DNA of 63,739 nt, filler included, from Guillardia theta CCMP2712 (GCF_000315625.1; 9 parts of 9 records of this genome joined end to end with filler, not necessarily neighbours in it), one strand, 5' to 3'. Shown: positions 22,871-41,455, numbered from the whole stretch's first letter. Notes: a model not told the origin generated them from the letters alone. A program made the numbers and translations.

Positions 22871-25800
22871 TTACGGGTTCCCCCGCTGCAGCAGCGTCTG
22901 TGCTCGTTCTATGAGGGCGGAGAGGTGGGTACTTCTTGTCTCTTTCCCCCTCCTCTCAGGCGGGACGTTCTCCTTTCCCATCCTCCTCTGCTGCCGGAGC
23001 CCCCGGTCGCCATCGGAGGACGGCGGATCCAGCGGACGACACCTTGCCATGTCGTCTTGCTGCCTGGAGGTCAGGAGGGAGAGCTCGGGCAGGAGAGCAG
23101 TGTCGTTGTAGTCCTGGAGGGAGCAGACAAGCTGCTGAAGTATCCTGTTCTGTTCCATGATGAGGTGGTTGGAGGATGCGGAGCTGTGCGAGTGTGAGAA
23201 GGCAGAGGGAGGAGAGGAGCGACTACCTCTTGTCTTGTTGAGATGTGCTGATGGCAGCAGGTTGAGGAGGAGGAACGTCTGAGGGAGAAGGGTGAGAGAC
23301 CGAGAGGGGGCAGGAAGATCAAAGAGGGAGAAGGCAAGGGAGGGGCAAGGAGAGACAAAACTTAAGGCGAGGAATGAGGAGAGGAGGAAGGAAGGAGAGG
23401 AAGAGGACTCTCAGGAGAGGGAGGGGAGGAGATTTCAAGGAGCCATACCGTGTGCCTTCTTCTTCAAGGCCTCTGCTTGTTTTCTAAAGTCTTGCTCAAG
23501 TTTCTCCGCGTCTTCTCGCGCTCTTCTCGCCTCCTCCTCCAGCTCTCTAGCCCTCCTGGCACAGACGCTCCGCTCCACCATCCTCAAGTGAACCTCCTCC
23601 TGCATCTGCTTCGCCTCTTTCTTCCGAGCGCTGAGCTCCTCCACCAGAAGCTGACGTGACCAAGACATCTCCGCCAGAGCCTTCTCGATGCACACAACTC
23701 GTCTCTCCTCCTCCTCCTCCCCGCCTCTTCCCCTGCCTCCTCGTTGCTCGCACTGGCATGCAGCATCGACTTGAGCAGGAGGAAGGGAGACGCTCCTTTC
23801 ACGCTCCTTCCTAGACAGCAGCTGCTGCACTGCAACCAGCTCCTGCTTGTAGTACTCCATGAGACCCGCAGCGTTGCTGAGCTCCTTCTCAAGACGCTGC
23901 CGGATCCCTGCCTGCTCCAACGCCTGCTGCCTGAACGCCAGCGTCTCAGCCCTGACCTTCTCTTGCTGCGTCCTCCGCCTCTCCAGCTCTCCTTCAGCTT
24001 CCCGCAGGTTGCACTCGAGGTGGGAGAGCTTGTTAGAAGTCGCGACCAGCTCGATCTCAACAGATCCCTTCTCAGCTTCCAGGAGCATGTGGAGATGCGA
24101 CAGGTGCGCACAAACCTCCTCCTTCGTCCTCTTCTCCTCAACCAGGCACGCGACCTTGCCTGCGAGCCGGGAGCAGACGACGGAGGCAAGCGCTGCCGCC
24201 TGCTCCTCCACCTCCTGCACCCTCCAGTCCAGCTCAGCCTGGGCTGTCTGCCACTCCTCCGCCACCCTCAGCTTCCTCCTCAGCCTCTTCACCTCGCTCC
24301 GGCACTGCATGAGAGCAGCACGTCCATCCTCCACCTCCCTCCGTAGACTCGCCGACTGCGCGAACTGATCGCGAAGGTCCTCTGCAAGTTCCATGAAGCA
24401 CCGACCAGACATCTCCACCTCTTTACCCAGCTGCACTGCAGAGGCCGCAAACTTGACGTTCCTCTCCTGGAAGACCACAAACCTATTGGAGAGCCTGTAG
24501 AGGTCCAGCTGGAGGGCTTCGCACTTGTCCTTCCACTCCCTGCAGGAGCAGGGCCGGCACCCGCCCCTTGCACTGCCCTCCTCCTCCCTCGCCCGCAGCA
24601 CTTCTCTTCGTTCCTCCTCCTTCGCTGCCTCCGCTGCCCTCAACTTCTTGCTCAGCCTTATAACCTCCTCCCTCCTCCCCTCCAGCTCCCCGAGGACAGA
24701 GCGATGGACGGAGCTCAAGTCAGCCAACGCTTGCTCGAGACCAAACACCTTCTTCTCATTCTCCAGCAGCCACACACTGCAGGTGCACAGCCTCTCCCCT
24801 CCCAACCGCAACCTCGCGAGGGAAGACATCTCAGCACGTAGCCTCTCCTCCGCCTCCCTCCGCCCTGCCTGGCTCGCCTCCAGCTCCCTCTTGCTCTCCC
24901 GCATCGCCTCCTCTACCTCCGACAGCCTCGCTCGCGTCTCCTCTGCCTTCCGCGACCAGAACTCCGCGTCCTGCCTCGCCGCCCCTGCCTCGTACGCAGC
25001 CTTCCTCAGCTCCTCGTCCCTCCTCGCCACCTCTCGCTTCAGCTCGGCCATCTCCTCCTCGCCTCCTCCGCTCCTCCTCCCTTCCTTCGTTGCCCCTCCT
25101 TCTGCTCTCCCCGCCCTCTCCTCCAGCGCTGCCTGCTGCTGCTTCAGCTCGGCTTCTAGCTGGCCCATCGCCTGCCTTGCTTGCTCCGCCTCCGCCCTCG
25201 CCAGCTCCGCCTCTCTTCGCTCCTCCCTCAATCGCGCCTCCTGGCCCGATATTGCCTCCTCCATCTGAGCTCGTGCTCCAGCAAGCCTCTCCTCCGCCTC
25301 CCTCCGCCCTGCCTGGCTCGCCTCCAGCTCCCTCTTGCTCTCCCGCATCGCCTCCTCTACCTCCGACAGCCTCGCTCGCGTCTCCTCTGCCTTCCGCGAC
25401 CAGAACTCCGCGTCCTGCCTCGCCGCCCCTGCCTCGTACGCAGCCTTCCTCAGCTCCTCGTCCCTCCTCGCCAACTCTCGCTTCAGCTCGGCCATCTCCT
25501 CCTCGCCTCCTCCGCTCCTCCTCCCTTCCTTCGTTGCCCCTCCCTCTGCTCTCCCCGCCCTCTCCTCCAGCACTGCCTGCTGCTGCTTCAGCTCGGCTTC
25601 TAGCTGGCCCATCGCCTGCCTTGCTTGCTCCGCCTCTGCCCTCGCCCGCTCCGCCTCTCTTCGCTCCTCCCTCAATCGCGCATCCTTGGCCGACATCTCT
25701 TCTTGAAGTTGCTTTAGAGTCTGTTGGTTTCCAATGTGCGTAAGTGCCATTCTGGAGTTGTGACAGTCAATCGTGATCATCCTTTGGAGAATGAGCTCAG

Positions 25801-28339
25801 CTTGCCTCTCCAGCTCATCAACGAGTTCAGAGGTTGACGCCAACATGCGCAAGCTTTTCTTGTCCTCCCTCGCTACCTTTTCAGCATCTTCGCACATTGC
25901 CCTCATTCTCTCTACCTGAGCTTGAAGAGCTTCCGACTTCTCCAGCAGCCTCCCCCTCTCCCCCTCGACCTCCTCAAGCCTCCTCAGAAGCTCAAACCGC
26001 TTAGTCTGATGCGACGGTGACATCAGGAACGATGCCGCCTCCTCCAGACGCTGCTTCTCTCCCGTCAAGCCCTCCACCCTCTCGACAAGCTTTCTCCTCT
26101 CCTCCTTCAGCCCCGCTGCTTCCTCCTTGCCTGCCTCGGCCTCTCGCCTGCTCTCCGCAAGCTCGCCCCTGACCCGATCTAGCTCCTGGCCAAGGGACTC
26201 GAGCTCCTGCCTGACCGACTGATGTTGTTCCGATAGTTCCTCAAGCTGCGCTCTGCTATCCTCAAGTTTGGAAGCAAGATTGGCTTTCTCGTTTTGTACC
26301 TCTTCCAAAATGATTTGCAGGCCATGGAGACTCTGCTGGTAGTACGAGGAGTGCGTGCCAATCTCCAAGATTTTCTTTTGCTGCTGCTCGAAGACCATCA
26401 TTGCAGACTTGTTCTCCTCTTCCAATTCACGAATTGATTCAGAACAGGATCGGACGGTGGCGTGGATGTAGTCTACAAACTTGGAGACTTCGCTGCTGCA
26501 AGCTTGTCGTTTCAAGGTCAAATCGCTGATCGTCTTTTTGGAGTCGTCCAGCAGCGTGGTAAGATTATGTTTCTCCTTCTCAAGAGCCTCAAACTGCCTG
26601 TCGTTCTGCATCTTCTTTGCCTGATGGGAGGGAGACATCAGAAACGCTGCCGCCTGTTCCAGCGCCTTCTTTTCATGCTCCAACTTCTCAATCCTTAGAG
26701 TAAGAGCCCTCTTCTCTTGGATGTGAGTAGAAATTTCTTGCTCATGGCAGGAGGCTTGCACCAACAGCTCTGAGAATCGCGTGTCAACATCAGCAGCCTC
26801 CCGTTTAAGCTGTTCCATGTTCGACATCAGTCTTGACACCTACGTCGACCCATCAAACGATGAATGAAGGGATGACATGGAGCAGATGTGGAAAGGAAAC
26901 TTGGGGGTGGCTGAAGAGAGTAAGAAAGATCGAACGGAAGGAAAGAGAAAGAGGGGAGGAGCAGAGAAGAAGCAGATTGGCACCTGCAATTCGACTGATC
27001 CCTTCTCTTGATTGAGATGTTCTATTTCCTTGGAAAGTTGGTCTTTCTCTTTCTTCTGTCTGCCGATTTCAACCTCAAGATTTTCGTTTGTCCTAGCCAG
27101 CGTCTTCGACAGCAACCTGAGCTCATCAAGCTCTTTCACCTGCGCCTGGTGTCTCTGCTCTAGTTCAAGATACTGCTTCCTCCAACGAAAGTCCTCTGAC
27201 ACGTGAGGATCTGGCGGAGCAAGTGCCTGAGAGGAGGGTTCATATCATGTTGGCGATGAAGGCAAGGAGCAGTACCATCGGTCGATCGGGCAAGCTCTCC
27301 AAAGAATGCTTCAGGTTCTCAATCTCTGAGGCGAGGATCTGCTGGTCCTTGACAAAAGAGGATTCTTTCATCGAGTGCAGCAGCTGCTGGACTTCGCAAA
27401 CGAAGATCCGACTGCCCTCCATGCACACTCCAGTCTTCCTCGAGAATTCCTTGTAGGGGGACACCAGCTTCGGAAAGAACATGTGCTTGGCTCTCTCGGA
27501 CAACGAGCTCTTGAGTTTCTCAGTCTCGGCAAGATCTGTCTGTGCAAACATGGCGTTGACAGTCTGCCGATCGTTGTAAATTCCAGTGAGAGACAAGGAC
27601 CGAAGACTTACTTGGATGGCTTGCATCGCTGCCATGCTGATCGCCTGCTTCTCTGCTAGCCCCTCGATGATAGCGCACACTCGACGACGATGGCTCACTG
27701 TCGGGGAGAACTCTGGCTTTGCCGGGCTGGACACCTGGCGGACGAGTCGTCAGCACTGAGTTTCAGCAGCCCTTTATCGTCACCTGGCCAAACTGTGTGC
27801 TGAGTGAGATTACGATTCCTGCATACTTCTCCTTGGGATGATCCATGGCGGCCTCGTCTGCAGCAACGTGCCGACGTCAGGCATGGTCAGAGGGAGAAAT
27901 GCTTCCCACTTGAGCTCGTGTCGGGAGTGCTCAAGCCTTTCAAGGACGGATTGTCCTCCATCTCGCTTTGGTTCGCTGTTTCCGTGTCTTTGTTCTTCTT
28001 CTTATTCCATGGCGGAGTAAACACCTTCTTTGATTTGCCTGATCCATTGGAGGTCAATACAACACTGTCATCATCGGATATCGTGGCAAACCAAGATTGT
28101 TCATTGCACGCAGAGTGTATGTCGGTAGAAAATTTCAGCTCCCACTACTCCCAACTGAAAACAGATGCCACGGACAAGTCAAGCACAGAAAAAAACACAT
28201 TCAAGTCCCCGAGTTCATCCTAATCTTGCCGCGCTTCGATTCTTTCAGTGATCGGCGTCAACAACATCATCAGCAGACATAGTGTCTTCGTCGATCTTCT
28301 CCTACACTTCTCCATGACATGCGACTGCTCACCTGACAT
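22871..28339 (-). CDS. Very large coiled-coil protein (E/R/A-rich; centrosomal or golgin-like)
   Basis: 1134-codon uninterrupted ORF 23435-26839 with heptad character, plus coiled-coil exons at 26990-27200 and 27240-28220 and a 3' exon near 22871-23160. Ends approximate. Confidence 0.8.
24840..25681. repeat. In-frame intragenic duplication, period 444 bp (148 aa)
   Basis: 24840-25237 is nearly identical to 25284-25681. Confidence 0.95.
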
Positions 28340-31287: not shown

Positions 31288-31683
31288 TCATCTCGTGCCA
31301 GCTTGTTCTCTGTCAAGCACTCCCTCTTCAAGGCACATCATTGTAGTCTCCTTGAGTTCCAACTGGCATGCTCCTGTCTGAGTTGCAGGCCTCGAAGTCT
31401 CATCCTCCGTCATTCCCGTAGCCTTCGCTCGTGCCTTCATCACGCTGTTCCACAGCAGCTCGCCCGTACCCGCACTCTGCCTTCGCTTCTTGGACTGCTC
31501 GGAGGGAAGACTGTCTAGCTGTGGAAAGCTTGCCCTGCGACTAGGAGCAGCATGCTGGGAGAGGGTCCAGTCGGGAGAGGGCTTGATGGTACGCCGGAGC
31601 CGGATGTCGTTTGGCTGAGGAGTTTGATGGGTAGGAGGAGCAGAAGGCGCTGCAGGTGAGGCATGGATCGAATCTTGGACCAT
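31288..31683 (-). CDS. Unknown small protein family 'X', copy 1 (divergent from RWP2)
   Basis: MVQDS...NDIRLRRTIKPSPDWTLSQHAAPSRRASFPQLDSLPSEQSKKRRQSAGTGELLWNSVMKAR...; differences between copies are mostly synonymous in this frame. Confidence 0.7.
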   Translation of the reverse strand: MVQDSIHASPAAPSAPPTHQTPQPNDIRLRRTIKPSPDWTLSQHAAPSRRASFPQLDSLPSEQSKKRRQSAGTGELLWNSVMKARAKATGMTEDETSRPATQTGACQLELKETTMMCLEEGVLDREQAGTR

Positions 31684-32196
31684 CTTGGCTAGTGGAGCTC
31701 CTGAACCCGTGCAGTTGAAGTTCGTGCTTGTGGTGGTGGTGGTGGTGGTGGTGGTGGTGGTGGTGGTAGGGGGCTCGCAACGTAGAGATTTTTCCTCAAG
31801 AATCACGAGGGCGGGGAGATAGAATTTACACTTAAAAGAGATACAGCTGCAAGATATGCCTTAGGGTACAATGATAAAATTGACAGTCAGAGATGTGGAG
31901 GGTCAGAGAAGTTGCGGGGTCTTGGAATCTAGCGATACACGTCTGGGCCTTACAGCAGTCACGAGGGACATGGGTCTACTCGACCTTCTCAAGTCGCAAA
32001 ACTAAGTCTTTTCGTCAAGAAGGCGCAATGTAGTAAAATGAGAAACTCCGAAAAGACTGCGTCTCGTGTTCACGTGCTCACTGCGTTAAAACGGATTCGG
32101 ATACAATCCCTGCCGCAACCCTCAACTCTCCTCTCCTCCCTCCTCCATTCGTCTTGGAAGGCTCTGACATCCTCGGCCCTCCCGCTAGAACCTCTC

Positions 32197-32697
32197 ATGC
32201 ACACCATGGAGACGATGCCTCTCAAGATCTTTCCTAGGAGGAAGCAGGGTCAGACCACCAGGGCGCCTGACGTCAGCCTGACATATGAACGAGTATCCTC
32301 CTTCTTTCACATGCGACTAGAAGATGCTGCGCATGAGCTGGTGAGAGCAATGCTCATTCAGTATGATAAATTCTTTGATCTCACGCAGACATTGCAGGGA
32401 ATCTCTTTGACTGCCTTAAGAAGCGCATGCCGGCGGCTAGGAATCGAGCGATGGCCATACAGCAGGAGTGGAAGAGAGGCAGAGGAAGCAAACATCACCC
32501 TGGAAGACAACACAGTCAGCATCGACACAGAGCGTGGAGATGGTGCAACAGAAGTGAATATTGCTGAGGGGGAGTCTCACGAGGACATTGAAATGGAGGA
32601 GCAGCAAAATCCAGACTATGAGGTTCATCCTCGGAGTCCAACTGCCTCTTTTGTAGAGTGGTACGTGAACATACCTCTTGACTCTGAAGAAGTCTAG
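32197..32697 (+). CDS. RWP-RK transcription factor (RWP2); intron 32341-32397
   Basis: LKIFPRRKQGQ...LTYERVSSFFHMRLEDAAHEL|GISLTALRSACRRLGIERWPYSR...FVEWYVNIPLDSEEV*; same intron position as RWP1. Confidence 0.92.
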   Translation: MHTMETMPLKIFPRRKQGQTTRAPDVSLTYERVSSFFHMRLEDAAHELVRAMLIQYDKFFDLTQTLQGISLTALRSACRRLGIERWPYSRSGREAEEANITLEDNTVSIDTERGDGATEVNIAEGESHEDIEMEEQQNPDYEVHPRSPTASFVEWYVNIPLDSEEV

Positions 32698-33430
32698 GGA
32701 ATCTGGACGATTCTAGCTTTCAACTGCTCGACGCGCCTTTCATGCCTTCATGCGTGAATGTGGAGAACAGCACTGAGTGTATTTTGAAAGAGAGTATTAC
32801 TGTCTGTTATGCATCATTATTTTCTCGACTATTCCCCTTCAATAAGTTTTTCTTGTAAAGTCCTACCTTCTACTTCTTTTGAAAGTTTGTTTCTTTGATT
32901 GTACTGCTCTCAAGGAGCCATGAGACGCCTTGTTTGATGAAAAAAAGTAAGTGGTTGCTATCCATTGCTCCAGTGTTTCTACACGCTTCAATGAGAGCTA
33001 ATTGGACGCGCTCTTTCATTCTTTTGTGAAAGGTCACGTAGACCCCATACCGACAAGACCAACGTGTGACTGATGAAACATTGTCATGTGCCATCTTACG
33101 TGCATATTTTCTCACCAACACGTTTCTGAGCAATCACAACGTAGCATCACTTGACACTTGATGTTCCGATTTTCTACCATTCAATCGACGTCAGCCTGAC
33201 AGACCCGCCTCAGTGCCTTATACATGTAATACTTATAATACTATAAGGTCACGAGGCTGCAAACAGAAATTTGAAAAGACCTGTTTTCCTTTCAAGTATG
33301 CTACGTGACCAGAGGACTCGATTTCTGCCATCTTTATCTCCCCCAACACGTAGGAAGGGAAGCCAGGGAAGCAAGAGAAAACGTCCGCGAAAGCATCAGA
33401 TCTGCTAATAATTTCTGCATCATAGCTGAT

Positions 33431-34086
33431 ATGGAGCAACGCCCGATCAAGATCTTCCCCCGCAGGAAGCAAGGTCAGCCCTCCCGAGGCCCCGACGTCT
33501 ACCTCACCCACGACCGCCTCGCCTCCTTCTTCCACATGCGCCAGAAAGACGCTGCCGAGAAGCTGGTAAGACCTCCTCTACACCATGCTTGAGTGAGCGT
33601 GGTTGTAAGAGCCAAGGAAAGGGGAGCGGGGAGTGTGGGGGGGGGGGGGGGGGGGGGGGGGGGGGGCGGATCTAAGAGGATCTGAGGGGGAGTGAGAGTG
33701 CGACGCAGGGGATCTCGCTGTCGGCGATGAGGAGCGCCTGCCGGCGTCTGGGGATCGAGCGATGGCCATACAGCAAGAGCGAGCGGGAGGAAGAGGAAGG
33801 AGGCAGCAAGGATGGCGACGAAGAAGACCAAGAGGAGGGAGAGATCCCTGGATCAGAGCCTGACAGGATGCCTGTAGAGCAAGTCGCTGATGCTATGGCA
33901 ACTTCGAGTGAGGGTTCTCCTGTCATGGAGGACGCAACAACTGCAGCTGCTTCTGGAAGCTCCAGTGATCCAATCATGTGGGGAGGCCAAGACGAGGTTC
34001 CTACGCCTGAGGTGCTGCCCCGGCCGCCGTCGGAAGCCTTCATGAAATGGTATGCGAGCGTTCCTAACGAGTCTGAGGATGTCTAG
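33431..34086 (+). CDS. RWP-RK transcription factor (RWP3); intron 33566-33708
   Basis: MEQRPIKIFPRRKQGQ...FHMRQKDAAEKL|GISLSAMRSACRRLGIERWPYSK...FMKWYASVPNESEDV*. Confidence 0.92.
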
Positions 34087-34875
34087 TGTGTAGCACGGTG
34101 GTCTCAAAGAAGATAAGACGAGAGGATGCAGACAGCATGCGACGATCGAGAGGAAGGTGGCAGAAGCTTTGAAGCATTACCACATTCATAAAGATTGCAT
34201 GTTAGACATTACATTGCTCCCTTCCATGGCAATCATTTCCAGACATTTCAATGATGTCTATTCTGTGAAATCAATTTATTGGGCAGCATTTGCTCATCGA
34301 GGAACTGCTTTCACTCTGTTGTTTCAACCGACTCCTGAGACTTTGATCCTTGAGAAATGGAAGGAAACGTTTCAAGGCAAGGGCGGGCACAGCCTGTAAG
34401 TTGGAACATGATCAGATATAACGATTTGTTCGCATGAGATGTCTTGAACGAATGATGTTTGGAGCTATTTCAAGGTACAAGGCAACTCCACTCCTTTCTG
34501 TTTGAGATGTCCACAAGTAGAAAGCTGTGAAATGTTCGTTGCAAAGAAATGAGGCACCTGGAACTAATCGTTCCATGAAAACATCTTGCCCTGTAGATTT
34601 TGCGTCGAATTGAGGATTGAAATGAGCTCTTGTTTGACGGTTTTTGGCTTCGCACACTCCAATATCATGCGGATTTTTGAGATGTAATCCTTTGCTAGAC
34701 ATGCTTCATGACAACGCGGACAAGTAGGGTTACGAGTTGCCGTCCATGATACTGTGCATCGAAAGAAAAAGAAAAAAAGAAAAGAAACCAAGGTAAAACT
34801 TTTGCCTGCGTTGTTTTATTATTTATGGGGAGAAGATATGGGGGAGATCTGACTGCTGACTGCTTCGGAGTTGCT

Positions 34876-35037
34876 TTCCCAATGCCTGTTTTGAACGCAA
34901 CGTTTCGAGCTAGGGGGAAGCACTAACTGCTTCCCAATGCCTGTTTTGAACGCAACGTTTCGAGCTAGAGCTTTACTATACGTTGAGATGCGGAGGTCAT
35001 TCCCGCGTGACCTCTGTCATTCCCTCGTGACCTCTGT
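34876..35037 (+). repeat. 38-bp direct repeat plus 20-bp tandem repeat upstream of X2
   Basis: TTCCCAATGCCTGTTTTGAACGCAACGTTTCGAGCTAG at 34876 and 34931; GTCATTCCC(G/T)CGTGACCTCT x2 at ~34996-35035. Confidence 0.9.
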
Positions 35038-35099
35038 ATCTGTAAATCGCTCAATCTCCACAAGACAAAGCTCGGAATCCTCCATACTCCTACGAACCC

Positions 35100-35531
35100 A
35101 TGCTCAGCGATGAGCGGCAGGAGCCCTCGACAAGCAGCCTGCCACGTGCTCACTTCCCGTTGTCTGGCATACCTGCTCCTCCAAACACTGCAACGAGCAA
35201 CAACACAAGCGATCATCCATTTCTCCTTCTCCATACTCCTCTTCACCTCGCTGACGACATCCGGCTCCGGCGTACCATCAAGCCCTCTCCCGACTGGACC
35301 CTCTCCCAGCATGCTGCTCCTAGTCGCAGGGCAAGCTTTCCTCAGCTAGACAGTCTTCCCTCCGAGCAGCCCAAGAAGCGACGGCAGAGTGCGGGTCCGG
35401 GCGAGCTGCTGTGGAATAGCGTGATGCAGGCAAGATCTAAGGTTACGGAGTCAGTGACATTTGATATCACAAGCTTACATGCTCGATCAAACCTGGCGCC
35501 TTCGCTGGAAGCAAACTTGTCTGCGTCCTGA
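35100..35531 (+). CDS. Family 'X', copy 2
   Basis: Same ~62-aa core, with unrelated N- and C-terminal flanks. Confidence 0.7.
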   Translation: MLSDERQEPSTSSLPRAHFPLSGIPAPPNTATSNNTSDHPFLLLHTPLHLADDIRLRRTIKPSPDWTLSQHAAPSRRASFPQLDSLPSEQPKKRRQSAGPGELLWNSVMQARSKVTESVTFDITSLHARSNLAPSLEANLSAS

Positions 35532-35925
35532 GTGAGAAACAAGGAAAGCCATGGTCTCGGCTGACAGCTTCGTAGGCTTCAGCCCATTAGGGCCCTTGAA
35601 CCACTCCGTTGACTTTGGTGTGCCTGAGTGCCTGAACTTTTGTTGACTTAAATCACGTCTATACTTGTTCGTGAGACTTGCTGAGGTCATGTTGCATGTG
35701 ATTCACGCTGATCGAACAGTAGTAGACAGTTTCTTCGTAATTTGAATGAACTACTCTCCATCTCCACCTCCACCTCCACCTCCACCTCCACCTCCACCTC
35801 CATCTCCACAGCGTTGCTCCATTTCCTCCTTGTACAAACCGTCTGCCCCTTCTTGCAATTTTGCTGCTCCACCTCAGGTGAAGAAGCAGAAGCCTCCATG
35901 AGCATCTCTCCTTCCCTTCAATGCA

Positions 35926-36040
35926 CGTGCCATCAAGCCAACTTTTCCTCGGCTAGACAGTCGTCCCTCCGAGCAGCCCAAGGAGCGACGGCAGAGTGCG
36001 GGTCAGGGCGAGCTGCTGTGGAATAGCGTGTTGCAGGCAA
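35926..36040 (+). pseudogene. Family 'X' remnant (copy 4) with an internal deletion
   Basis: RAIKP-[SPDW...RRA deleted]-TFPRLDSRPSEQPKERRQSAGQGELLWNSVLQA; in-frame upstream TGA and no ATG. Confidence 0.7.
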
Positions 36041-37278
36041 AAGAAAATCAAACAATCTGCAAATATTTTCATTGGTTTTGGCCTTATTGGATAAGAGGGT
36101 TCGTGGTGCCCAGCAAACACGACACTCTACGAACAAAACACGTACAAACTCTGCAGAGCAATCAGTCGTTGATCTCAGGGACTCTGTCTCTACTTGTACT
36201 TACTTAGCAGGATCCGACATCTGCTCTTGACCTTGATCAGTTAGCGATGGCTGCTTGTAGGTACAAGTCCCAACCTATGCTTTGAGAAATGGAATTATTT
36301 GCATGAGGTACCATAATGAAACACGAAAACAGACAGCCACACGCATACATTCCCTCTCTTGTCTGGAAAAAGGACATGGCATCTGGTTTATTTGACAGAG
36401 AGAAAACTGTTCTCGTGATGAGATCATTTGCTTGATGTCTTGAAAATCCAAGTCGGTTGTATATCATGATTCAATGAGCCATAGTCAGAATATGAGAAGT
36501 GGCTCGATGATTTTTAGTGAAACTGGTTTCCAAAATGCATTATTCTAACCCGAAGTCTCATGACCTTCTTCTCCGCTCCATTTTCAAGCAGTTCATGTTC
36601 AGTTTTACACACACCATCGCATCCGTAGCATTCGAAATCTCTTGTTTTTATTGCGGAGCCGTACGACCACCAAATTTCTAAAGTCAACCAGGACAATATC
36701 AAAATCGAATCGTCCCAACGACTGTGTCTTTCGATTCGCATGACTGTGCACAACCACAACAGACTTTCTTTGGTGACTGTTAGCTCGTAATTTTTCCATG
36801 CCTCACACAGCTTGACGTGTGAGAGAGTGAATGAAATCACACACCTTCCCATGCTCTGCAAAATATGAATCAGTCACACCATGAAAAGCTGTTGGTTGTG
36901 CAATCACCGTTCTTCTATGCAGACTCATGACAGTGTAAGGAGATCAAGTAGATTCCATCAATAAGGCAGAGCAATGAAGTTTGCTGATCACTCGCCGGGA
37001 AGACAAAGACGGTGATGTCGTTTCGATGTGATCAACAAGGCCATGTGAACTCGTTAGCTCCCTATCCTCCGCATCGCAATCAAGGGGAAAAATAACGAAT
37101 GCTCTATTTCCTATGTGGAAGGCAGCAATCATCATTCCTACTGGAAACTAGATGTCCTCATCAAGATTTCCAATCATTTGATGAGGCAGGCCCGTTCAAT
37201 TAAAAAAAATGCAGCATGACTTTTGCCTGTTAGAAAAAAAGACTAAAAAACACTTAGCACATCCCCCCGGAGCAGCGC

Positions 37279-37943
37279 ATGGAGCAACGCCCGATCAAGA
37301 TCTTCCCCCGCAGGAAGCAAGGTCAGCCCTCCCGAGGCCCCGACGTCTACCTCACCCACGACCGCCTCGCCTCCTTCTTCCACATGCGCCAGAAAGACGC
37401 TGCCGAGAAGCTGGTAAGACCTCCTCTACACCATCCTTGAGTGAGCGTGGTTGTAAGAGCCAAGGAAAGGGGAGAGGGGGGGGGGAGGAGTTCTAAGAGG
37501 ATCTGAGGGGGAGTGAGAGTGCGATGCAGGGGATCTCGCTGACGGCGATGAGGAGCGCCTGCCGGCGTCTGGGGATCGAGCGATGGCCATACAGCAAGAG
37601 CGAGCGGGAGGAAGAGGAAGGAGGGAGCGGGGATGGTCAACAGGGGGAGCCGGCATCAATGGAGAAGTCATATGGGTCAAAAGCCAGTGTCGCCGAAGGA
37701 AAGGTGGAAATGGGTGAAGGAGCAGGGCGATCGCAACCTGATTTCGTTGAGCTGAACCAATTTGAAAGCTCTTCTTCCTGTCAGACCATCGATGGCAGCG
37801 TTGAGGGTACGGGAAGGAGCGATGAAATGTATGCTTGGATCAGCCAGGACGAGGTCCCTACGCCTGAAGTGCTGCCCCGGCCGCCGTCGGAAGCCTTCAT
37901 GAAATGGTATGCGAGCGTTCCTAACGAGTCTGAGGATGTCTAG
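37279..37943 (+). CDS. RWP-RK transcription factor (RWP4); intron 37414-37529
   Basis: Exon 1 identical to RWP3; GISLTAMRSACRRLGIERWPYSK; same C-terminus. Confidence 0.92.
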
Positions 37944-38599
37944 TGCGCGCCTGGAGAGTCACAACACAAGGAAGACAATTACCGGAAAGTCTTTTACTCC
38001 CGATGACGTCACTGGCCGTTTGCTGCTGCATCCTCTTGTTTAAAAGGATGGCAGGTTGGGTCGCAGGGGGCCTTGGTAGGCTTTTGTTGACTTTACGCTG
38101 CTGAGCATGAAATATGGCATTGTTGCTTGTTGCGTGTTGCCCTCGATCGGCGAGGCAACCATTTAACCTGTTTGTTGCTGATTGCAAGATTTGCAAGCAT
38201 GGATTTACCCAGTAAACATCATGGAGTGTGAAACCTTGATTGAAAAACAAGAAAAAATGATGATAAGTTTGATGATAGAATTGTGATTGTTTTCAGAATA
38301 CACACGAATGTTCCAGTTTACTTGCAAGATAGAATACAGTTCAATGATCCCTCACCTTTGACATCTCAAAACACTGGCATGCTCGTTTTTGCGCTACAAA
38401 TTCTCTTCTAAGCTCCAGAGCAACCATTCCCTAACAATGTCTACACTAAGAAAAGAGTCGTGAGAGTGATCATGCTCGATCTTTAGAATCTCTAGAGCAC
38501 AACATGCATTGGACATGCTCAGCACCTTCCCCTCCGCGATTCATTCTCTAGCGAACCATACATTGCAATATTCTTACGTGTGCTCATGCCTCTGCGCAT

Positions 38600-38920
38600 C
38601 CTCTATTGCATAGTCAGTCTTCGTCGCAAGTATACATGACGTCATAGCGATCGCAGTCCTCTTGCTTCTCCTCTTGCTCTGCAGTCACCTTATCTGCCGA
38701 GACAAAGAATGGTATTCGGTAAGATCAACCAGCTCTAGAGCGTCGCAGAAAGCATCTCAAGTTTCCTGTTCTTCTTCAAATCATACCTTGCCAACCAGTT
38801 GACAGGCGACGATGATGTTCGGAATGAGCTGGTGGCAGCTCGTGCTGACTGGGTAGTAAGGAGCGTATCGTTGTTCAGCAAGTTGCAAAGCTTGATTGGA
38901 CCAGCAGACACGATGCGTTG
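38600..38920 (+). CDS. Possible small single-pass membrane protein gene
   Basis: IHDVIAIAVLLLLLLLCSHLICRDKEWYS|SVAESISSFLFFFKSYLANQLTGDDDVRNELVAARADW|...; canonical GTAAG donor, start not found. Confidence 0.3.
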
Positions 38921-39255
38921 ACAAGAGGAAGACGAATTGTGACTGATGAAGGGCAGGATGACCGCATGGGATGACCGGGAGGGAGGGGGAAGGGTTGGCC
39001 AGTGACTCTTTCGGAGTTCGATTCCTTCTGGCTCTCTGTATCGCAACGCTTCCACCCAATGTTTACTACATGAATTTAGAGTGATACAAGAATACATGTT
39101 TTCAGCTTCTTGGGTCTGTAAGCTTCAATATCCGAAGATTCTAGAACAGTTGTAGAACGAACGTGTAGCACCTCCTCGTTTGCTCGGCAGGCTGCGCGGA
39201 AGGGAAAAGTTGCTCGTCTTTCACGAGCGGCGACCAAAACCATCCAGCATTCAAC

Positions 39256-39774
39256 ATGGCATCCGATTCGAGTACATGCCAACATGCGCACGATCAGCAC
39301 CAACAGCATCGACAACAACATCATCACCATGAGCCTCTACAGTCCGATCCATCTGAATCACACGACACTGATTTACAAGACCTCCCTGATGGACTCATAG
39401 CTGCAGTTTCTGCTCCTCTTGCCCCTGCTCATTCATCTCAGAACCCCACACTCGTTTCAATTGACATTCACCATTACATGCCCAACTCTCCTGCTCCTAT
39501 CCCCGCTTCTCCTCCTCCTCCTCCTGCTCCTACAAATCTGATAGAACTTGATCCAAACGACATCCGTCTTCGGCGTACCATCAAGCCCTCTCCCGACTGG
39601 ACCCTCTCCCAGCATGCTGCTCCTAGTCGCAGGGCAAGCTTTCCTCAGCTTGACAGTCTTCCCTCCGAGCAGCCCAAGAAGCGAAGGCAGAGTGCGGGTC
39701 CGGGCGAGCTGCTGTGGAATAGCGTGATGAAGGCAAGATCTAAGGTTACGGAGTCCAACTCCGAAGATGTTTGA
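39256..39774 (+). CDS. Family 'X', copy 3
   Basis: H/Q/P-rich N-terminus, then the conserved core; ends TESNSEDV*. Confidence 0.75.
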   Translation: MASDSSTCQHAHDQHQQHRQQHHHHEPLQSDPSESHDTDLQDLPDGLIAAVSAPLAPAHSSQNPTLVSIDIHHYMPNSPAPIPASPPPPPAPTNLIELDPNDIRLRRTIKPSPDWTLSQHAAPSRRASFPQLDSLPSEQPKKRRQSAGPGELLWNSVMKARSKVTESNSEDV

Positions 39775-40229
39775 GCAGCTTTGCTGGGAATCAATGACGA
39801 AGGAGTTTCTGATGAGAGCCCGACTGGAGACTGCTAGAGGACGATGCCGTGAGTTAGGGTTTATTTTCTTAGCGTCTGTTACCTGTGTGCGCGAATATGC
39901 TAGGGGCGGAGGGAGTGCGCTCAAATGAATGAAAACTTTCAAAAGTTGGCAACTCTTTGATTGTCTGTGGGATGAAGAAATCATTGTATTAATTGCCTCC
40001 ATGAGAAGCAGCACCTATGGCATCATCTTCAAGGTCGCACTGGCGGCATCCAGGTTGAACTAGTAACGGCACGTAGAGGATTCCAGCAGGCTTCTTGCAG
40101 GACCCAGCATCTTTTTCGCAACTTTCGTTACGGAGATTGAACGTATCATCGAGTCGTCGTATGGCGACAGTCTGATGAAGTGAGTGTTCGCAACTTTCAC
40201 TTGCAACTGTTGAACGGAGGCTCAGTCAC

Positions 40230-41060
40230 TAGGCGCTGAGCGGCGTACGGTCGTGTTTCGGTAGTATCATGCTCAGTTCACCACTGAGTCCGACTCTCAC
40301 TGCCGTCACTGTGCACTGACGGCGAAAGAGCCTCGCGGCAGTGCGCCGGCCCCACTCAGTGCCCAGCTCCAAACTTCCGGCAAGCCGCTCCCGTTCAGTA
40401 TGAAAAGTCACAAGTTACTTCCGAAGTTAGTCACTGGGGCTTGCCGCGTGCGGGGCGGCCACCCCGTGACCGGGTCACCTGGGTCGGAACTCGTCGGAAC
40501 TTCGGATCACCTCGGTGATCATAGTAAGCCGGCCGCGCTGGTAACCAGGTTGAGGGGGCCCGGACTCCGGGATCATCACTGCGCCGCGCCCGAACCGTTC
40601 AACGGTCGAAGGCTCCGAGTCACCGGGTTTCAAGCCAGAAGTTGACTGCTTCCGGCGCCGCCGGGCGGAGCCTATGACCCGGTCACGGTGGCAAGTTTAA
40701 GTTAAATTGGCTCTTAGATGATTCCATTATGATGCGGGCCGGCGCCCCGTGACTGCCCCCGGCCACGGGCCCGGCCGGCTCGGCGGTGACAGCGCCCAGC
40801 CGCCGGCGGCGGCGGCGGGCCCCCGGGGCGGCGGGGTGGGCTGTCACTCGTCAACCACACCCCCGCAGTGGCGGCCCCCCCCGGCCGGAGGCTTAGGCCG
40901 GGCCCGGACTGACCGTACCGTACGGTGGCAGCGCGGCCATTCAAGATTGATCAGATCGGACCGTCCGACCGGCGGCGGACCGGTCCGACGGGCCCCCCGG
41001 GGCCCGGGGGGGCCTGAGCGGTGACGCGGCCGCCTCCGTGATTGAGGGCCCTAAGGTCGG
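40230..41060. other. GC-rich intergenic island 4
   Basis: Same vocabulary; partial AAGTTTAAGTTAAA at ~40693. Confidence 0.7.
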
Positions 41061-41311
41061 GTAGGACTATTGACAAGATCGACATCATGGTGAAAGGTAA
41101 AAGGATATGCTTTATGGCATAGAGGATCAAATATAAACTTCTAGAGCTAGGGGTGGGCATACCGAGTCATGTGCTGATCTGGATTTCAGTGGGGTGGGGT
41201 ACCCAAGGCTCGTTTTGACCGGGGGGTGGGTGGACGATAACGGTCAAGTCAAGACACGATGATGCTGGCGATCGGAGGAAAACCTAGAGGATGCCGGCAT
41301 GCGGACAGGAA

Positions 41312-41455
41312 AGAGCAGGAGAGCAGGAGAGCAGGAGAGCAGGAGAGCAGGAGAGCAGGAGAGCAGCAGAGCAGCAGAGCAGCAGAGCAGCAGAGCAGCA
41401 GAGCAGCAGAGCAGCAGAGCAGCAGAGCAGCAGAGCAGCAGAGCAGCAGAGCAGG
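41312..41455. repeat. 8-bp microsatellite (GAGCAGGA)n/(GAGCAGCA)n
   Basis: Directly visible. Confidence 0.9.

What the first reader, a model, noticed from the sequence alone, without database searches (positions are those of the whole stretch)
31288..39774. Array of RWP-RK transcription factors each paired with an unknown small gene 'X': candidate undescribed two-gene regulatory module
Seen: the order is X1<- ->RWP2 ->RWP3 ->X2 ->X4(remnant) ->RWP4 ->(possible small ORF) ->X3 within ~8.5 kb of one scaffold. Every RWP-RK gene has an X neighbour within ~0.5-1.3 kb, while the intergenic DNA between pairs shows no visible homology. Established: RWP-RK proteins include the volvocine mating-type determinant MID, plant RKD gamete-fate regulators and NIN/NLP/NIT2 nitrogen regulators. 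Inference: X is a dedicated partner (co-factor, inhibitor or target), and the array could be a gamete/mating-type or nitrogen-response locus in a lineage where sex is poorly characterised.
Basis: partly seen in the sequence, partly recalled or inferred. Interest (0 to 1): 0.85.

Follow-up and report, generated by a model that had tools for sequence, protein, structure and literature searches.

The report
RWP-RK genes interleaved with orphan gene
In the cryptophyte alga Guillardia theta, three small RWP-RK transcription-factor genes really do sit interleaved with three copies (plus one relic) of a lineage-specific, expressed orphan gene, but the pairing is best explained by repeated duplication of one ancestral gene pair, and nothing yet shows that the two proteins work together.

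Summary
The piece is Guillardia theta CCMP2712 scaffold JH993015.1.

**RWP-RK genes.** It carries three small RWP-RK genes, RWP2, RWP3 (GUITHDRAFT_111329) and RWP4 (GUITHDRAFT_111330). Each has an intron at the same position inside the domain.

**X copies.** It also carries three intact copies and one truncated relic of an unknown ORF, X.

**X is a real gene:**
- Its roughly 66-codon core evolves under purifying selection (omega 0.17-0.36).
- It has a homologue in a Hanusia phi transcriptome (E 5e-21) and an orthologue in a metagenome relative.
- X3 is transcribed as an unspliced mRNA of at least 1 kb.
- X has no Pfam family and no detectable similarity to the RWP-RK proteins.
- The model is disordered, with two conserved RRxS sites, a KKRR patch and one C-terminal helix.

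**Origin of the pairing.** The three pairs trace to one ancestral adjacency that was copied as a unit. Gene conversion has since homogenised the X cores and RWP3/RWP4.

**Partnership is unsupported:**
- X3 is well expressed in libraries where the RWP genes are nearly silent.
- The closest RWP-RK paralogue elsewhere (GUITHDRAFT_103347) has no X within 10 kb.
- The complex prediction gave no verdict.

**New lead.** A 9-mer, TTCGGAGTT, lies about 240 nt upstream of every X ORF.

A mating-type or nitrogen role remains untested speculation. Interest is moderate to low.

The parts
31288..31683 (-). X1 coding sequence as annotated (131 aa, P0001). The mechanical ORF runs on to a GTG at 31806 through an (ACC)n tract. 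Conserved core at about 31411-31614.
32044..32052 (-). TTCGGAGTT motif, in sense orientation for X1, in the X1/RWP2 divergent intergenic region. It lies 246 nt upstream of the X1 ORF start and 154 nt upstream of the RWP2 ATG.
32206..32697 (+). RWP2, a small RWP-RK gene. Exon 1 is 32206-32340, the GT-AG intron is 32341-32397 (57 nt, in frame) and exon 2 is 32398-32697. Spliced product 144 aa; the database model P0012 keeps the intron (163 aa). The protein ends in SEEV.
33431..34086 (+). RWP3 = GUITHDRAFT_111329 (170 aa). Exon 1 is 33431-33565, the intron is 33566-33708 (it contains a 30-nt poly-G run) and exon 2 is 33709-34086. The protein ends in SEDV.
34864..34872 (+). TTCGGAGTT motif 237 nt upstream of the X2 ATG. 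It is followed 23 nt later by CGCAACG, the same spacing as upstream of X3. It is kept in the metagenome orthologue L001.
35100..35531 (+). X2 ORF (143 aa, not called in the gene table for this scaffold stretch). Core at 35253-35453; the tail after the core is not conserved. Only weak transcript evidence: a 169-nt contig at 35041-35209, depth 2.5.
35935..36069 (+). X4, a truncated relic of the X core. It keeps only the 3' half, at 86-89% nt identity. It has no in-frame start codon and almost no transcript signal.
37279..37943 (+). RWP4 = GUITHDRAFT_111330 (182 aa). Exon 1 is 37279-37413, the intron is 37414-37529 and exon 2 is 37530-37943. Exon 1 is identical to that of RWP3, the middle acidic linker is divergent and the C-terminal 103 nt are 97% identical. 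The protein ends in SEDV.
38532..38886 (-). Low-level transcript between RWP4 and X3 (contigs of depth 2.7-3.3). Strand is inferred as minus from a few stranded reads. It may be a divergent transcript from the X3 promoter. The overlapping 120-aa ORF has no Pfam hit.
39010..39018 (+). TTCGGAGTT motif 241 nt upstream of the X3 ATG and about 155 nt upstream of the 5' end of the X3 transcript contig.
39172..40000 (+). X3 mRNA: collinear and unspliced. The contig is 1063 nt, so it runs past 40000. CDS is 39256-39774 (172 aa), and the first ATG of the transcript is the ORF start. Core at 39553-39756. The protein ends in SEDV.

Best explanation
This is a lineage-specific tandem gene cluster in Guillardia theta. 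It arose when an ancestral two-gene unit was duplicated repeatedly. The unit held one small RWP-RK transcription-factor gene and one orphan gene, X.

Steps that are shown:
- RWP2-4 are bona fide RWP-RK proteins. Each has an N-terminal DNA-binding domain split by an intron at a conserved position, an acidic disordered linker and a short conserved C-terminal motif.
- X is a separate, single-exon, protein-coding gene with its own transcript.
- The X product is a small, mostly disordered basic protein. Its roughly 66-residue core is conserved in the Guillardia/Hanusia clade. The core holds two RRxS-type sites, a KKRR patch and one C-terminal helix.
- The copies evolve in concert. X cores have dS of only 0.11-0.16, and RWP3 and RWP4 share an identical exon 1 and a near-identical intron. 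By contrast RWP2 versus RWP3 is saturated (dS about 1.75) and all flanks are unalignable.
- A block of sites in the core groups X2 with X3, but groups the X2 orthologue of a relative with X1. That is a signature of gene conversion.

Steps that are inferred:
- The recurrent RWP-X adjacency is historical. It is one ancestral neighbourhood copied two or three times, with a local X2/X4 duplication and an inversion of X1.
- X is regulated from its own promoter, which carries TTCGGAGTT about 240 nt upstream of the ORF start in all three copies. X3 acts as the expressed member under standard culture.
- The RWP genes are condition-specific regulators that stay silent or low in such cultures.
- Functional coupling between X and the RWP-RK proteins is possible but has no direct support.
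For: - Organism and gene identities.
- RWP-RK domain: PF02042 at 45.6-59.7 bits against a cut-off of 29.3. The AF2 model shows a folded N-terminal helical domain (pLDDT 79-92), a disordered linker and a short C-terminal helix.
- X copies and relic.
- X is coding and conserved. HMMER against 1.84 billion representatives returns only X1, a metagenome orthologue and Hanusia phi P0006 at E 5e-21. Omega is 0.17-0.36. In-frame N-terminal extensions of 50-100 codons starting from an ATG are present in all three copies.
- X3 transcript: held at 0.91-0.96 in three RNA-like runs. A collinear 1063-nt contig has depth 42.6, with no joints to RWP4.
- Unit duplication: the RWP3-to-RWP4 spacing is 3821-3857 nt and the X4-to-X3 spacing is 3696 nt, in the same orientation. 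There is no intergenic homology.
- Gene conversion: dS contrasts and the site pattern at core positions 165-191.
- Promoter motif: 4 occurrences against 0.15 expected. Three are sense-oriented at equivalent distances upstream of X, and the motif is kept in the orthologue L001.
Against: - Both genes have been retained in all three units for long enough to randomise the intergenic DNA. Linkage is also apparently kept in a relative. Both facts would fit selection on the pair as well, so a purely historical adjacency is not proven.
- RWP3, RWP4 and X3 share the C-terminal tetrapeptide SEDV, and RWP2 ends in SEEV. This is unexplained and could point to a shared interactor.
- I could not search the rest of the G. 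theta assembly for unannotated X copies.
- RNA evidence comes from assembled contigs of runs whose RNA nature is a guess, plus only 27 raw reads.
Confidence: 0.7

Rival explanations
1. A functional two-gene module. X would be a dedicated cofactor, inhibitor or direct target of the neighbouring small RWP-RK factors. The array would then be a life-stage, gamete or nitrogen-response switch.
For: - Both genes are retained in three old duplicate units.
- Contigs from a relative hint at collinearity.
- All X promoters share a conserved motif that could be a common regulatory input.
- X3 and RWP3/4 share the C-terminal SEDV.
- X has phospho-site-like and NLS-like motifs and an amphipathic helix, typical of small regulatory adaptors.
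Against: - The adjacency is a single evolutionary event.
- X3 is expressed where the RWP genes are nearly silent.
- The closest RWP-RK paralogue elsewhere lacks X within 10 kb.
- There is no sequence relationship between X and the RWP proteins.
- The land-plant NLP half-site occurs only at chance frequency in the piece.
- There are no data on sex, strains or nitrogen.
Confidence: 0.17
2. The X core is not a protein-coding gene. It would be a conserved non-coding or repeat-derived element, such as a mobile fragment, a regulatory DNA or a structured RNA, that happens to lie in open frames.
For: The core is 94-97% identical at the nucleotide level, has very sharp boundaries and has unalignable flanks.
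Against: - Changes are mostly synonymous (omega 0.17-0.36).
- Conservation with Hanusia phi is at the protein level, 56% identity.
- ATG-initiated ORFs are maintained in all three copies.
- Only three or four copies are known, all within 8.5 kb.
- There is no Rfam hit.
- X3 is the first-AUG ORF of an abundant mRNA.
Confidence: 0.04
3. An assembly artefact. The array would be a mis-join or an expansion of fewer real copies.
For: None positive. The copies are highly similar and the assembly is a 2012-era draft. A 30-nt poly-G run lies in the RWP3 intron.
Against: - The 9-kb stretch is held at 0.96 and 0.83 of its words in runs filed under two studies. One of them may be the window's own source, so independent support may rest on a single data set.
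- RNA contigs and the metagenome contigs are collinear with it.
- Each copy has unique flanks and copy-specific substitutions.
Confidence: 0.03

Closest known systems
Small RWP-RK-only transcription factors (volvocine MID, plant RKD class)
   Same: The proteins are short (144-182 aa). The RWP-RK domain is their only recognised domain.
   Different: - The domain is N-terminal here.
- The motif reads RWPYSK/RWPYSR, not RWPxRK.
- There is a clade-specific C-terminal motif (F-x-K/E-W-Y ... SE[DE]V).
- No phylogeny with MID or RKD was made, and no sex-limited distribution or gamete expression is known.
NIN/NLP/NIT2 nitrogen regulators
   Same: They share the RWP-RK DNA-binding domain.
   Different: - There is no GAF-like or PB1 domain, and the proteins are far too short.
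- The NLP half-site TGRCYCTT is not enriched in the piece: 5 found against 5.5 expected (consensus taken from PMC13170786).
Tandem gene arrays under concerted evolution (gene conversion between paralogues)
   Same: - Coding cores are near-identical between copies whose flanks are unalignable.
- The identity tracts are mosaic.
- The site patterns are incongruent with orthology.
   Different: Two unrelated genes are interleaved here, and each is homogenised separately.
microProteins / truncated-paralogue inhibitors of transcription factors (Id, LITTLE ZIPPER type)
   Same: A small protein is encoded next to a TF gene. In principle it could titrate the TF.
   Different: microProteins are homologous to the interaction domain of their target. 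X shows no similarity to the RWP proteins: BLASTP finds nothing, hhalign probability is 0.2% and the shuffle tests are not significant.

Membership tests
RWP-RK domain family (Pfam PF02042) | Significant match to the RWP-RK profile above the curated cut-off | tested here: met
   Scores are 59.7 bits (RWP4), 58.8 bits (RWP3) and 45.6 bits (RWP2, intron retained) against a cut-off of 29.3.
RWP-RK domain family (Pfam PF02042) | Invariant RWPxRK signature | tested here: inconclusive
   RWP is invariant, but the following residues read Y-S-K (RWP3/4) or Y-S-R (RWP2). The paralogue GUITHDRAFT_103347 has Y-R-R. This is a variant of the signature.
NIN-like proteins (NLP/NIN/NIT2) | RWP-RK combined with an N-terminal GAF-like region and (in NLPs) a C-terminal PB1 domain | tested here: not met
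   Only PF02042 is found, and the proteins are 144-182 aa.
MID/RKD-type sex or gamete regulators | Small protein with RWP-RK as its only domain | tested here: met
MID/RKD-type sex or gamete regulators | Phylogenetic grouping with MID/RKD, and mating-type-limited presence or gamete-specific expression | not tested
Only one strain is available, and no life-stage RNA data could be identified.
microProtein (truncated paralogue of its target TF) | Detectable homology of the small protein to a domain of the TF | tested here: not met
   BLASTP gives no alignment at E<=100. hhalign probability is 0.2%. Smith-Waterman against 2000 shuffles gives p of 0.2-0.99.
Any described protein family, for X | Match to Pfam, or to proteins outside the Guillardia/Hanusia clade | tested here: not met
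   - No Pfam hit at E<=10 for any member.
- The HMMER profile search finds only clade members, and the remaining weak hits are repeats on bacterial contigs.
- The best Atlas score is 0.83.

The most novel reading that the evidence does not exclude
X is a clade-specific, phospho-regulated small nuclear protein that partners with, or is directly controlled by, the adjacent MID-like small RWP-RK factors. The possible links are its amphipathic C-terminal helix, the shared SEDV terminus, or the TTCGGAGTT promoter element. The cluster would then be a life-stage or mating switch in a lineage (Geminigeraceae cryptophytes) where a haploid-diploid alternation is known but no regulator has been identified.
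Probability: 0.12. Interest if true: 0.75.

Novelty: new member of a known kind. Interest (0 to 1): 0.35.

Why it matters
Cryptophytes have a haploid-diploid dimorphism (PMC7486100). Small RWP-RK factors are the obvious candidates, because MID and RKD play that role in green algae and plants.

A compact cluster of three such genes gives a concrete locus to test:
- it evolves in concert;
- it is silent in ordinary cultures;
- it is interleaved with an expressed clade-specific orphan gene.

X itself is an undescribed gene family with a recognisable conserved core and a candidate promoter element. As it stands, though, the two-gene module is only a hypothesis built on one ancestral adjacency.

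Tried and rejected
- **X as a degenerate copy of the RWP-RK domain or of the RWP C-terminus** (a by-eye resemblance such as PDVYLT..LASFF against PDWTLS..RASFP). Rejected: BLASTP, hhalign and shuffle tests show nothing.
- **Distant X homologues P0007, P0008 and P0011.** These are translated tandem repeats on bacterial contigs and are chance matches.
- **JGI metagenome scan with the X profile.** No relative found.
- **Language-model Atlas search with X3.** Best score 0.83, uninformative.
- **Complex prediction of RWP4 with the X3 core.** No verdict (score 0.00, controls not run). This is neither support nor evidence against binding.
- **Land-plant NLP half-site TGRCYCTT.** One exact copy abuts the X3 motif, but the pattern occurs at chance frequency in the piece. 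No support.
- **Motifs shared between the X and RWP promoters.** None found; RWP upstream regions share nothing above shuffles.
- **Rfam scan of the piece.** Nothing found. The sigma-70 and terminator scan is irrelevant for a eukaryote and was empty.
- **Literature search for the locus tags.** No paper found.
- Two scripts at first mis-registered the metagenome X copy by one codon. One search corrects this. The values involving XL should be ignored.
Full report
**What is there**

The piece (20055-43568) is part of Guillardia theta CCMP2712 scaffold JH993015.1, which is 553,741 bp long. A protein search returns RWP4 as GUITHDRAFT_111330 (182 aa) and RWP3 as GUITHDRAFT_111329 (170 aa). The gene table for this scaffold stretch lists three RWP-RK genes and one 131-aa gene that equals X1.

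The three RWP-RK genes lie on the + strand:

| Gene | Exon 1 | Intron | Exon 2 |
|---|---|---|---|
| RWP2 | 32206-32340 | 32341-32397 | 32398-32697 |
| RWP3 | 33431-33565 | 33566-33708 | 33709-34086 |
| RWP4 | 37279-37413 | 37414-37529 | 37530-37943 |

In each gene a GT-AG intron splits the RWP-RK domain at the same codon boundary, after the conserved Leu of ..EKL/..HEL and before GISL. Pfam PF02042 scores are 45.6-59.7 bits against a cut-off of 29.3.

The AF2 model of RWP4 has three parts:
- a confident N-terminal helical domain (residues 1-70, pLDDT 79-92);
- a disordered acidic linker (residues 74-148);
- a short C-terminal helix inside a conserved motif that ends in SEDV.

**The X genes**

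- X1 is at 31288-31806 on the minus strand; the annotated CDS is 31288-31683.
- X2 is at 35100-35531 (+).
- X3 is at 39256-39774 (+).

They share a core of about 66 codons that is 94-97% identical in DNA. Everything outside the core is unalignable. X4 (35935-36069) keeps only the 3' 106 nt of the core at 86-89% identity, lacks an in-frame start and has essentially no transcript signal. It is a relic.

**Is X a gene?**

Yes, on four lines of evidence.

1. Substitutions among the three cores are mainly synonymous: dS 0.11-0.16, dN 0.02-0.05, omega 0.17-0.36.
2. A full HMMER profile search of 1.84 billion representative proteins finds exactly three real relatives:
   - X1 itself;
   - a metagenome protein, P0002;
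   - a 113-aa protein from the Hanusia phi transcriptome (EukProt), at E 5e-21 and 56% identity over the core.
   
   The weaker hits are translated repeats on bacterial contigs.
3. All three copies keep ATG-initiated N-terminal extensions of 50-100 codons. These are low in complexity and unrelated to one another. Open frames of that length in three places would be unlikely by chance.
4. X3 is transcribed.
   - The 751-nt X3 stretch is held at 0.91-0.96 in three runs. Those runs hold only 10-14% of the 9-kb region, so they behave as transcriptomes.
   - Laying the runs gives collinear, unspliced contigs: 1063 nt (39172 to beyond 40000, depth 42.6), 692 nt (depth 19.2) and 379 nt (depth 8).
   - True RNA-seq raw reads lie over the 3' part.
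   - The ORF start is the first ATG of that transcript.

X has no Pfam family. The AF2 model of the core is disordered except for one helix, at residues 52-73 with pLDDT about 81. Read directly from the sequence, the conserved core carries:
- two RRxS sites, RRASF and KRRQS, both also basophilic in Hanusia;
- a KKRR patch;
- a hydrophobic face, LLWxxVM, on the helix.

Reading these as kinase, 14-3-3 or NLS motifs is inference from general knowledge. It was not tested.

**How the array arose**

RWP3 and RWP4 are 3821-3857 nt apart. X4 and X3 are 3696 nt apart, in the same orientation. X2 lies 607 nt upstream of X4. This fits a tandem duplication of a unit [RWP then X], a local X duplication in which one copy decayed, and an older unit (X1/RWP2) in which X is inverted.

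A sensitive blastn finds no intergenic homology. RWP3/RWP4 similarity begins exactly at the ATG and ends about 30 nt after the stop.

Divergence is strikingly uneven:
- RWP3 and RWP4 have an identical exon 1 and introns that are 93-97% identical, but a middle linker at only about 50% amino-acid identity.
- RWP2 against RWP3 is saturated at synonymous sites (dS about 1.75).
- The X1 core, which sits next to RWP2, differs from X2 and X3 by only dS 0.13-0.16.

If the units were duplicated together, X must have been homogenised afterwards. Direct evidence comes from core positions 165-191. There X2 groups with X3, while the copy on metagenome contig L001 groups with X1, even though L001 is the positional orthologue of X2 by its flanks. 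The cluster therefore evolves in concert by gene conversion, together with strong purifying selection on the core.

**Does the pairing mean partnership?**

The three adjacencies descend from one ancestral adjacency, so they count once.

Points for some constraint:
- Both genes survive in all three units despite intergenic turnover.
- Two contigs from one metagenome project map collinearly to 33644-34489 (RWP3 and its downstream region, 85% identity) and to 34615-35746 (the X2 locus). Only about 125 nt separate them on the window. This hints that RWP3-to-X2 linkage is conserved in a relative.

Points against, or neutral:
- In the RNA-like assemblies X3 is abundant. RWP3, RWP4 and X2 appear only as fragments of depth 2-3.
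- The pieces laid on 34001-40000 already account for each run's whole share of the 9-kb region. X1, RWP2 and the RWP3 exons are therefore essentially absent.
- The most similar RWP-RK paralogue outside the cluster is GUITHDRAFT_103347, which has the same intron-bearing architecture and the same W-x-W-Y C-terminal motif. It has no X-like sequence within 10 kb on either side.
- A Rhodomonas study reports 56 RWP-RK-like transcripts, so X cannot be a general partner of the family.
- X is not a truncated RWP paralogue.
- The complex prediction returned no verdict.

**A new lead**

The 9-mer TTCGGAGTT occurs four times in the window, against 0.15 expected. Three copies are in sense orientation at equivalent distances upstream of the X ORF starts:
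- 246 nt for X1, measured to the GTG of the long ORF;
- 237 nt for X2;
- 241 nt for X3.

The X2 and X3 copies are followed 23 nt later by CGCAACG. The motif is kept in the X2 orthologue L001. It is the only intergenic similarity that survived, and it is a plausible shared promoter element of the X genes. The RWP promoters share nothing comparable.

One exact land-plant NLP half-site (TGACTCTT) abuts the X3 motif. That pattern is at chance frequency in the piece (consensus from PMC13170786).

**Comparison with known systems**

RWP2-4 are members of the RWP-RK family. They are not NLP/NIN-type, because they have no GAF or PB1 domain. They resemble MID and RKD only in being small, single-domain proteins. 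Their phylogenetic placement and any sex or gamete link are untested.

X belongs to no described family. No paper mentions these loci. Cryptophyte haploid-diploid dimorphism is documented (PMC7486100, listed). That is why a silent cluster of small RWP-RK genes is worth testing, but nothing here ties this locus to it.

**Verdict**

This is an ordinary kind of genome feature, a tandem cluster under concerted evolution, that contains an undescribed orphan family. Interest is 0.35. The most novel reading not excluded is a dedicated RWP-X life-stage module, at a probability of about 0.12.

Noticed in passing
window 34063-34086, 37920-37943, 39751-39774, 32674-32697: RWP3, RWP4 (and the metagenome RWP3 orthologue P0005) and X3 all end in the tetrapeptide SEDV, and RWP2 ends in SEEV. 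Most of the four shared codons differ at the third position between RWP4 and X3, so this is not a recent DNA copy. X1, X2 and the Hanusia X do not end this way. It could be a shared C-terminal short linear motif, or it could be coincidence.
   Followed up: partly
window 33637-33666: An uninterrupted 30-nt poly-G run lies inside the RWP3 intron. The paralogous RWP4 intron has only about 11 G there. This could be G-quadruplex-prone, or a place of assembly or sequencing uncertainty.
   Followed up: no
window 34876-34913 and 34931-34968: A perfect 38-nt direct repeat (period 55 nt) lies in the X2 promoter and contains the CGCAACG element. Identity to the metagenome orthologue L001 collapses over 34855-34914, and its motif-to-ATG distance is about 55 nt shorter, so it apparently carries only one copy.
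   Followed up: partly
window 38532-38886 (also 36908-37098): Low-depth transcript fragments lie between RWP4 and X3, probably on the minus strand and divergent from the X3 promoter. More fragments lie about 200 nt upstream of the RWP4 ATG. The overlapping 120-aa ORF (38735-39097, minus) has no Pfam hit.
   Followed up: partly
window 23435-26839 (-): A large coiled-coil ORF (1134 aa in one frame; the annotated gene is 1373 aa) contains a near-perfect internal tandem duplication of about 150 residues. Its only Pfam hit is sub-threshold (CENP-F_leu_zip). The region is GC-rich (0.61-0.67) with strong negative GC skew.
   Followed up: no
window 41312-41454 and 40200-41200: There is an 18-copy tandem repeat of the 8-mer AGAGCAGC. 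Next to it is a GC-rich (about 0.64) block with long ORFs on both strands and no family match.
   Followed up: no
window 33607-33614 and 37455-37462 (-): The land-plant NLP half-site variant TGGCTCTT sits at the paralogous position in both the RWP3 and the RWP4 intron. The overall frequency of the pattern is at chance, so this probably reflects paralogy only.
   Followed up: partly
L001 against window 34615-35746: The metagenome relative is mosaic against G. theta. It is 95-100% identical across the X2 5' region and core (34975-35394), but only 32-88% identical in the adjacent DNA. Divergence along the locus is unusually uneven.
   Followed up: partly
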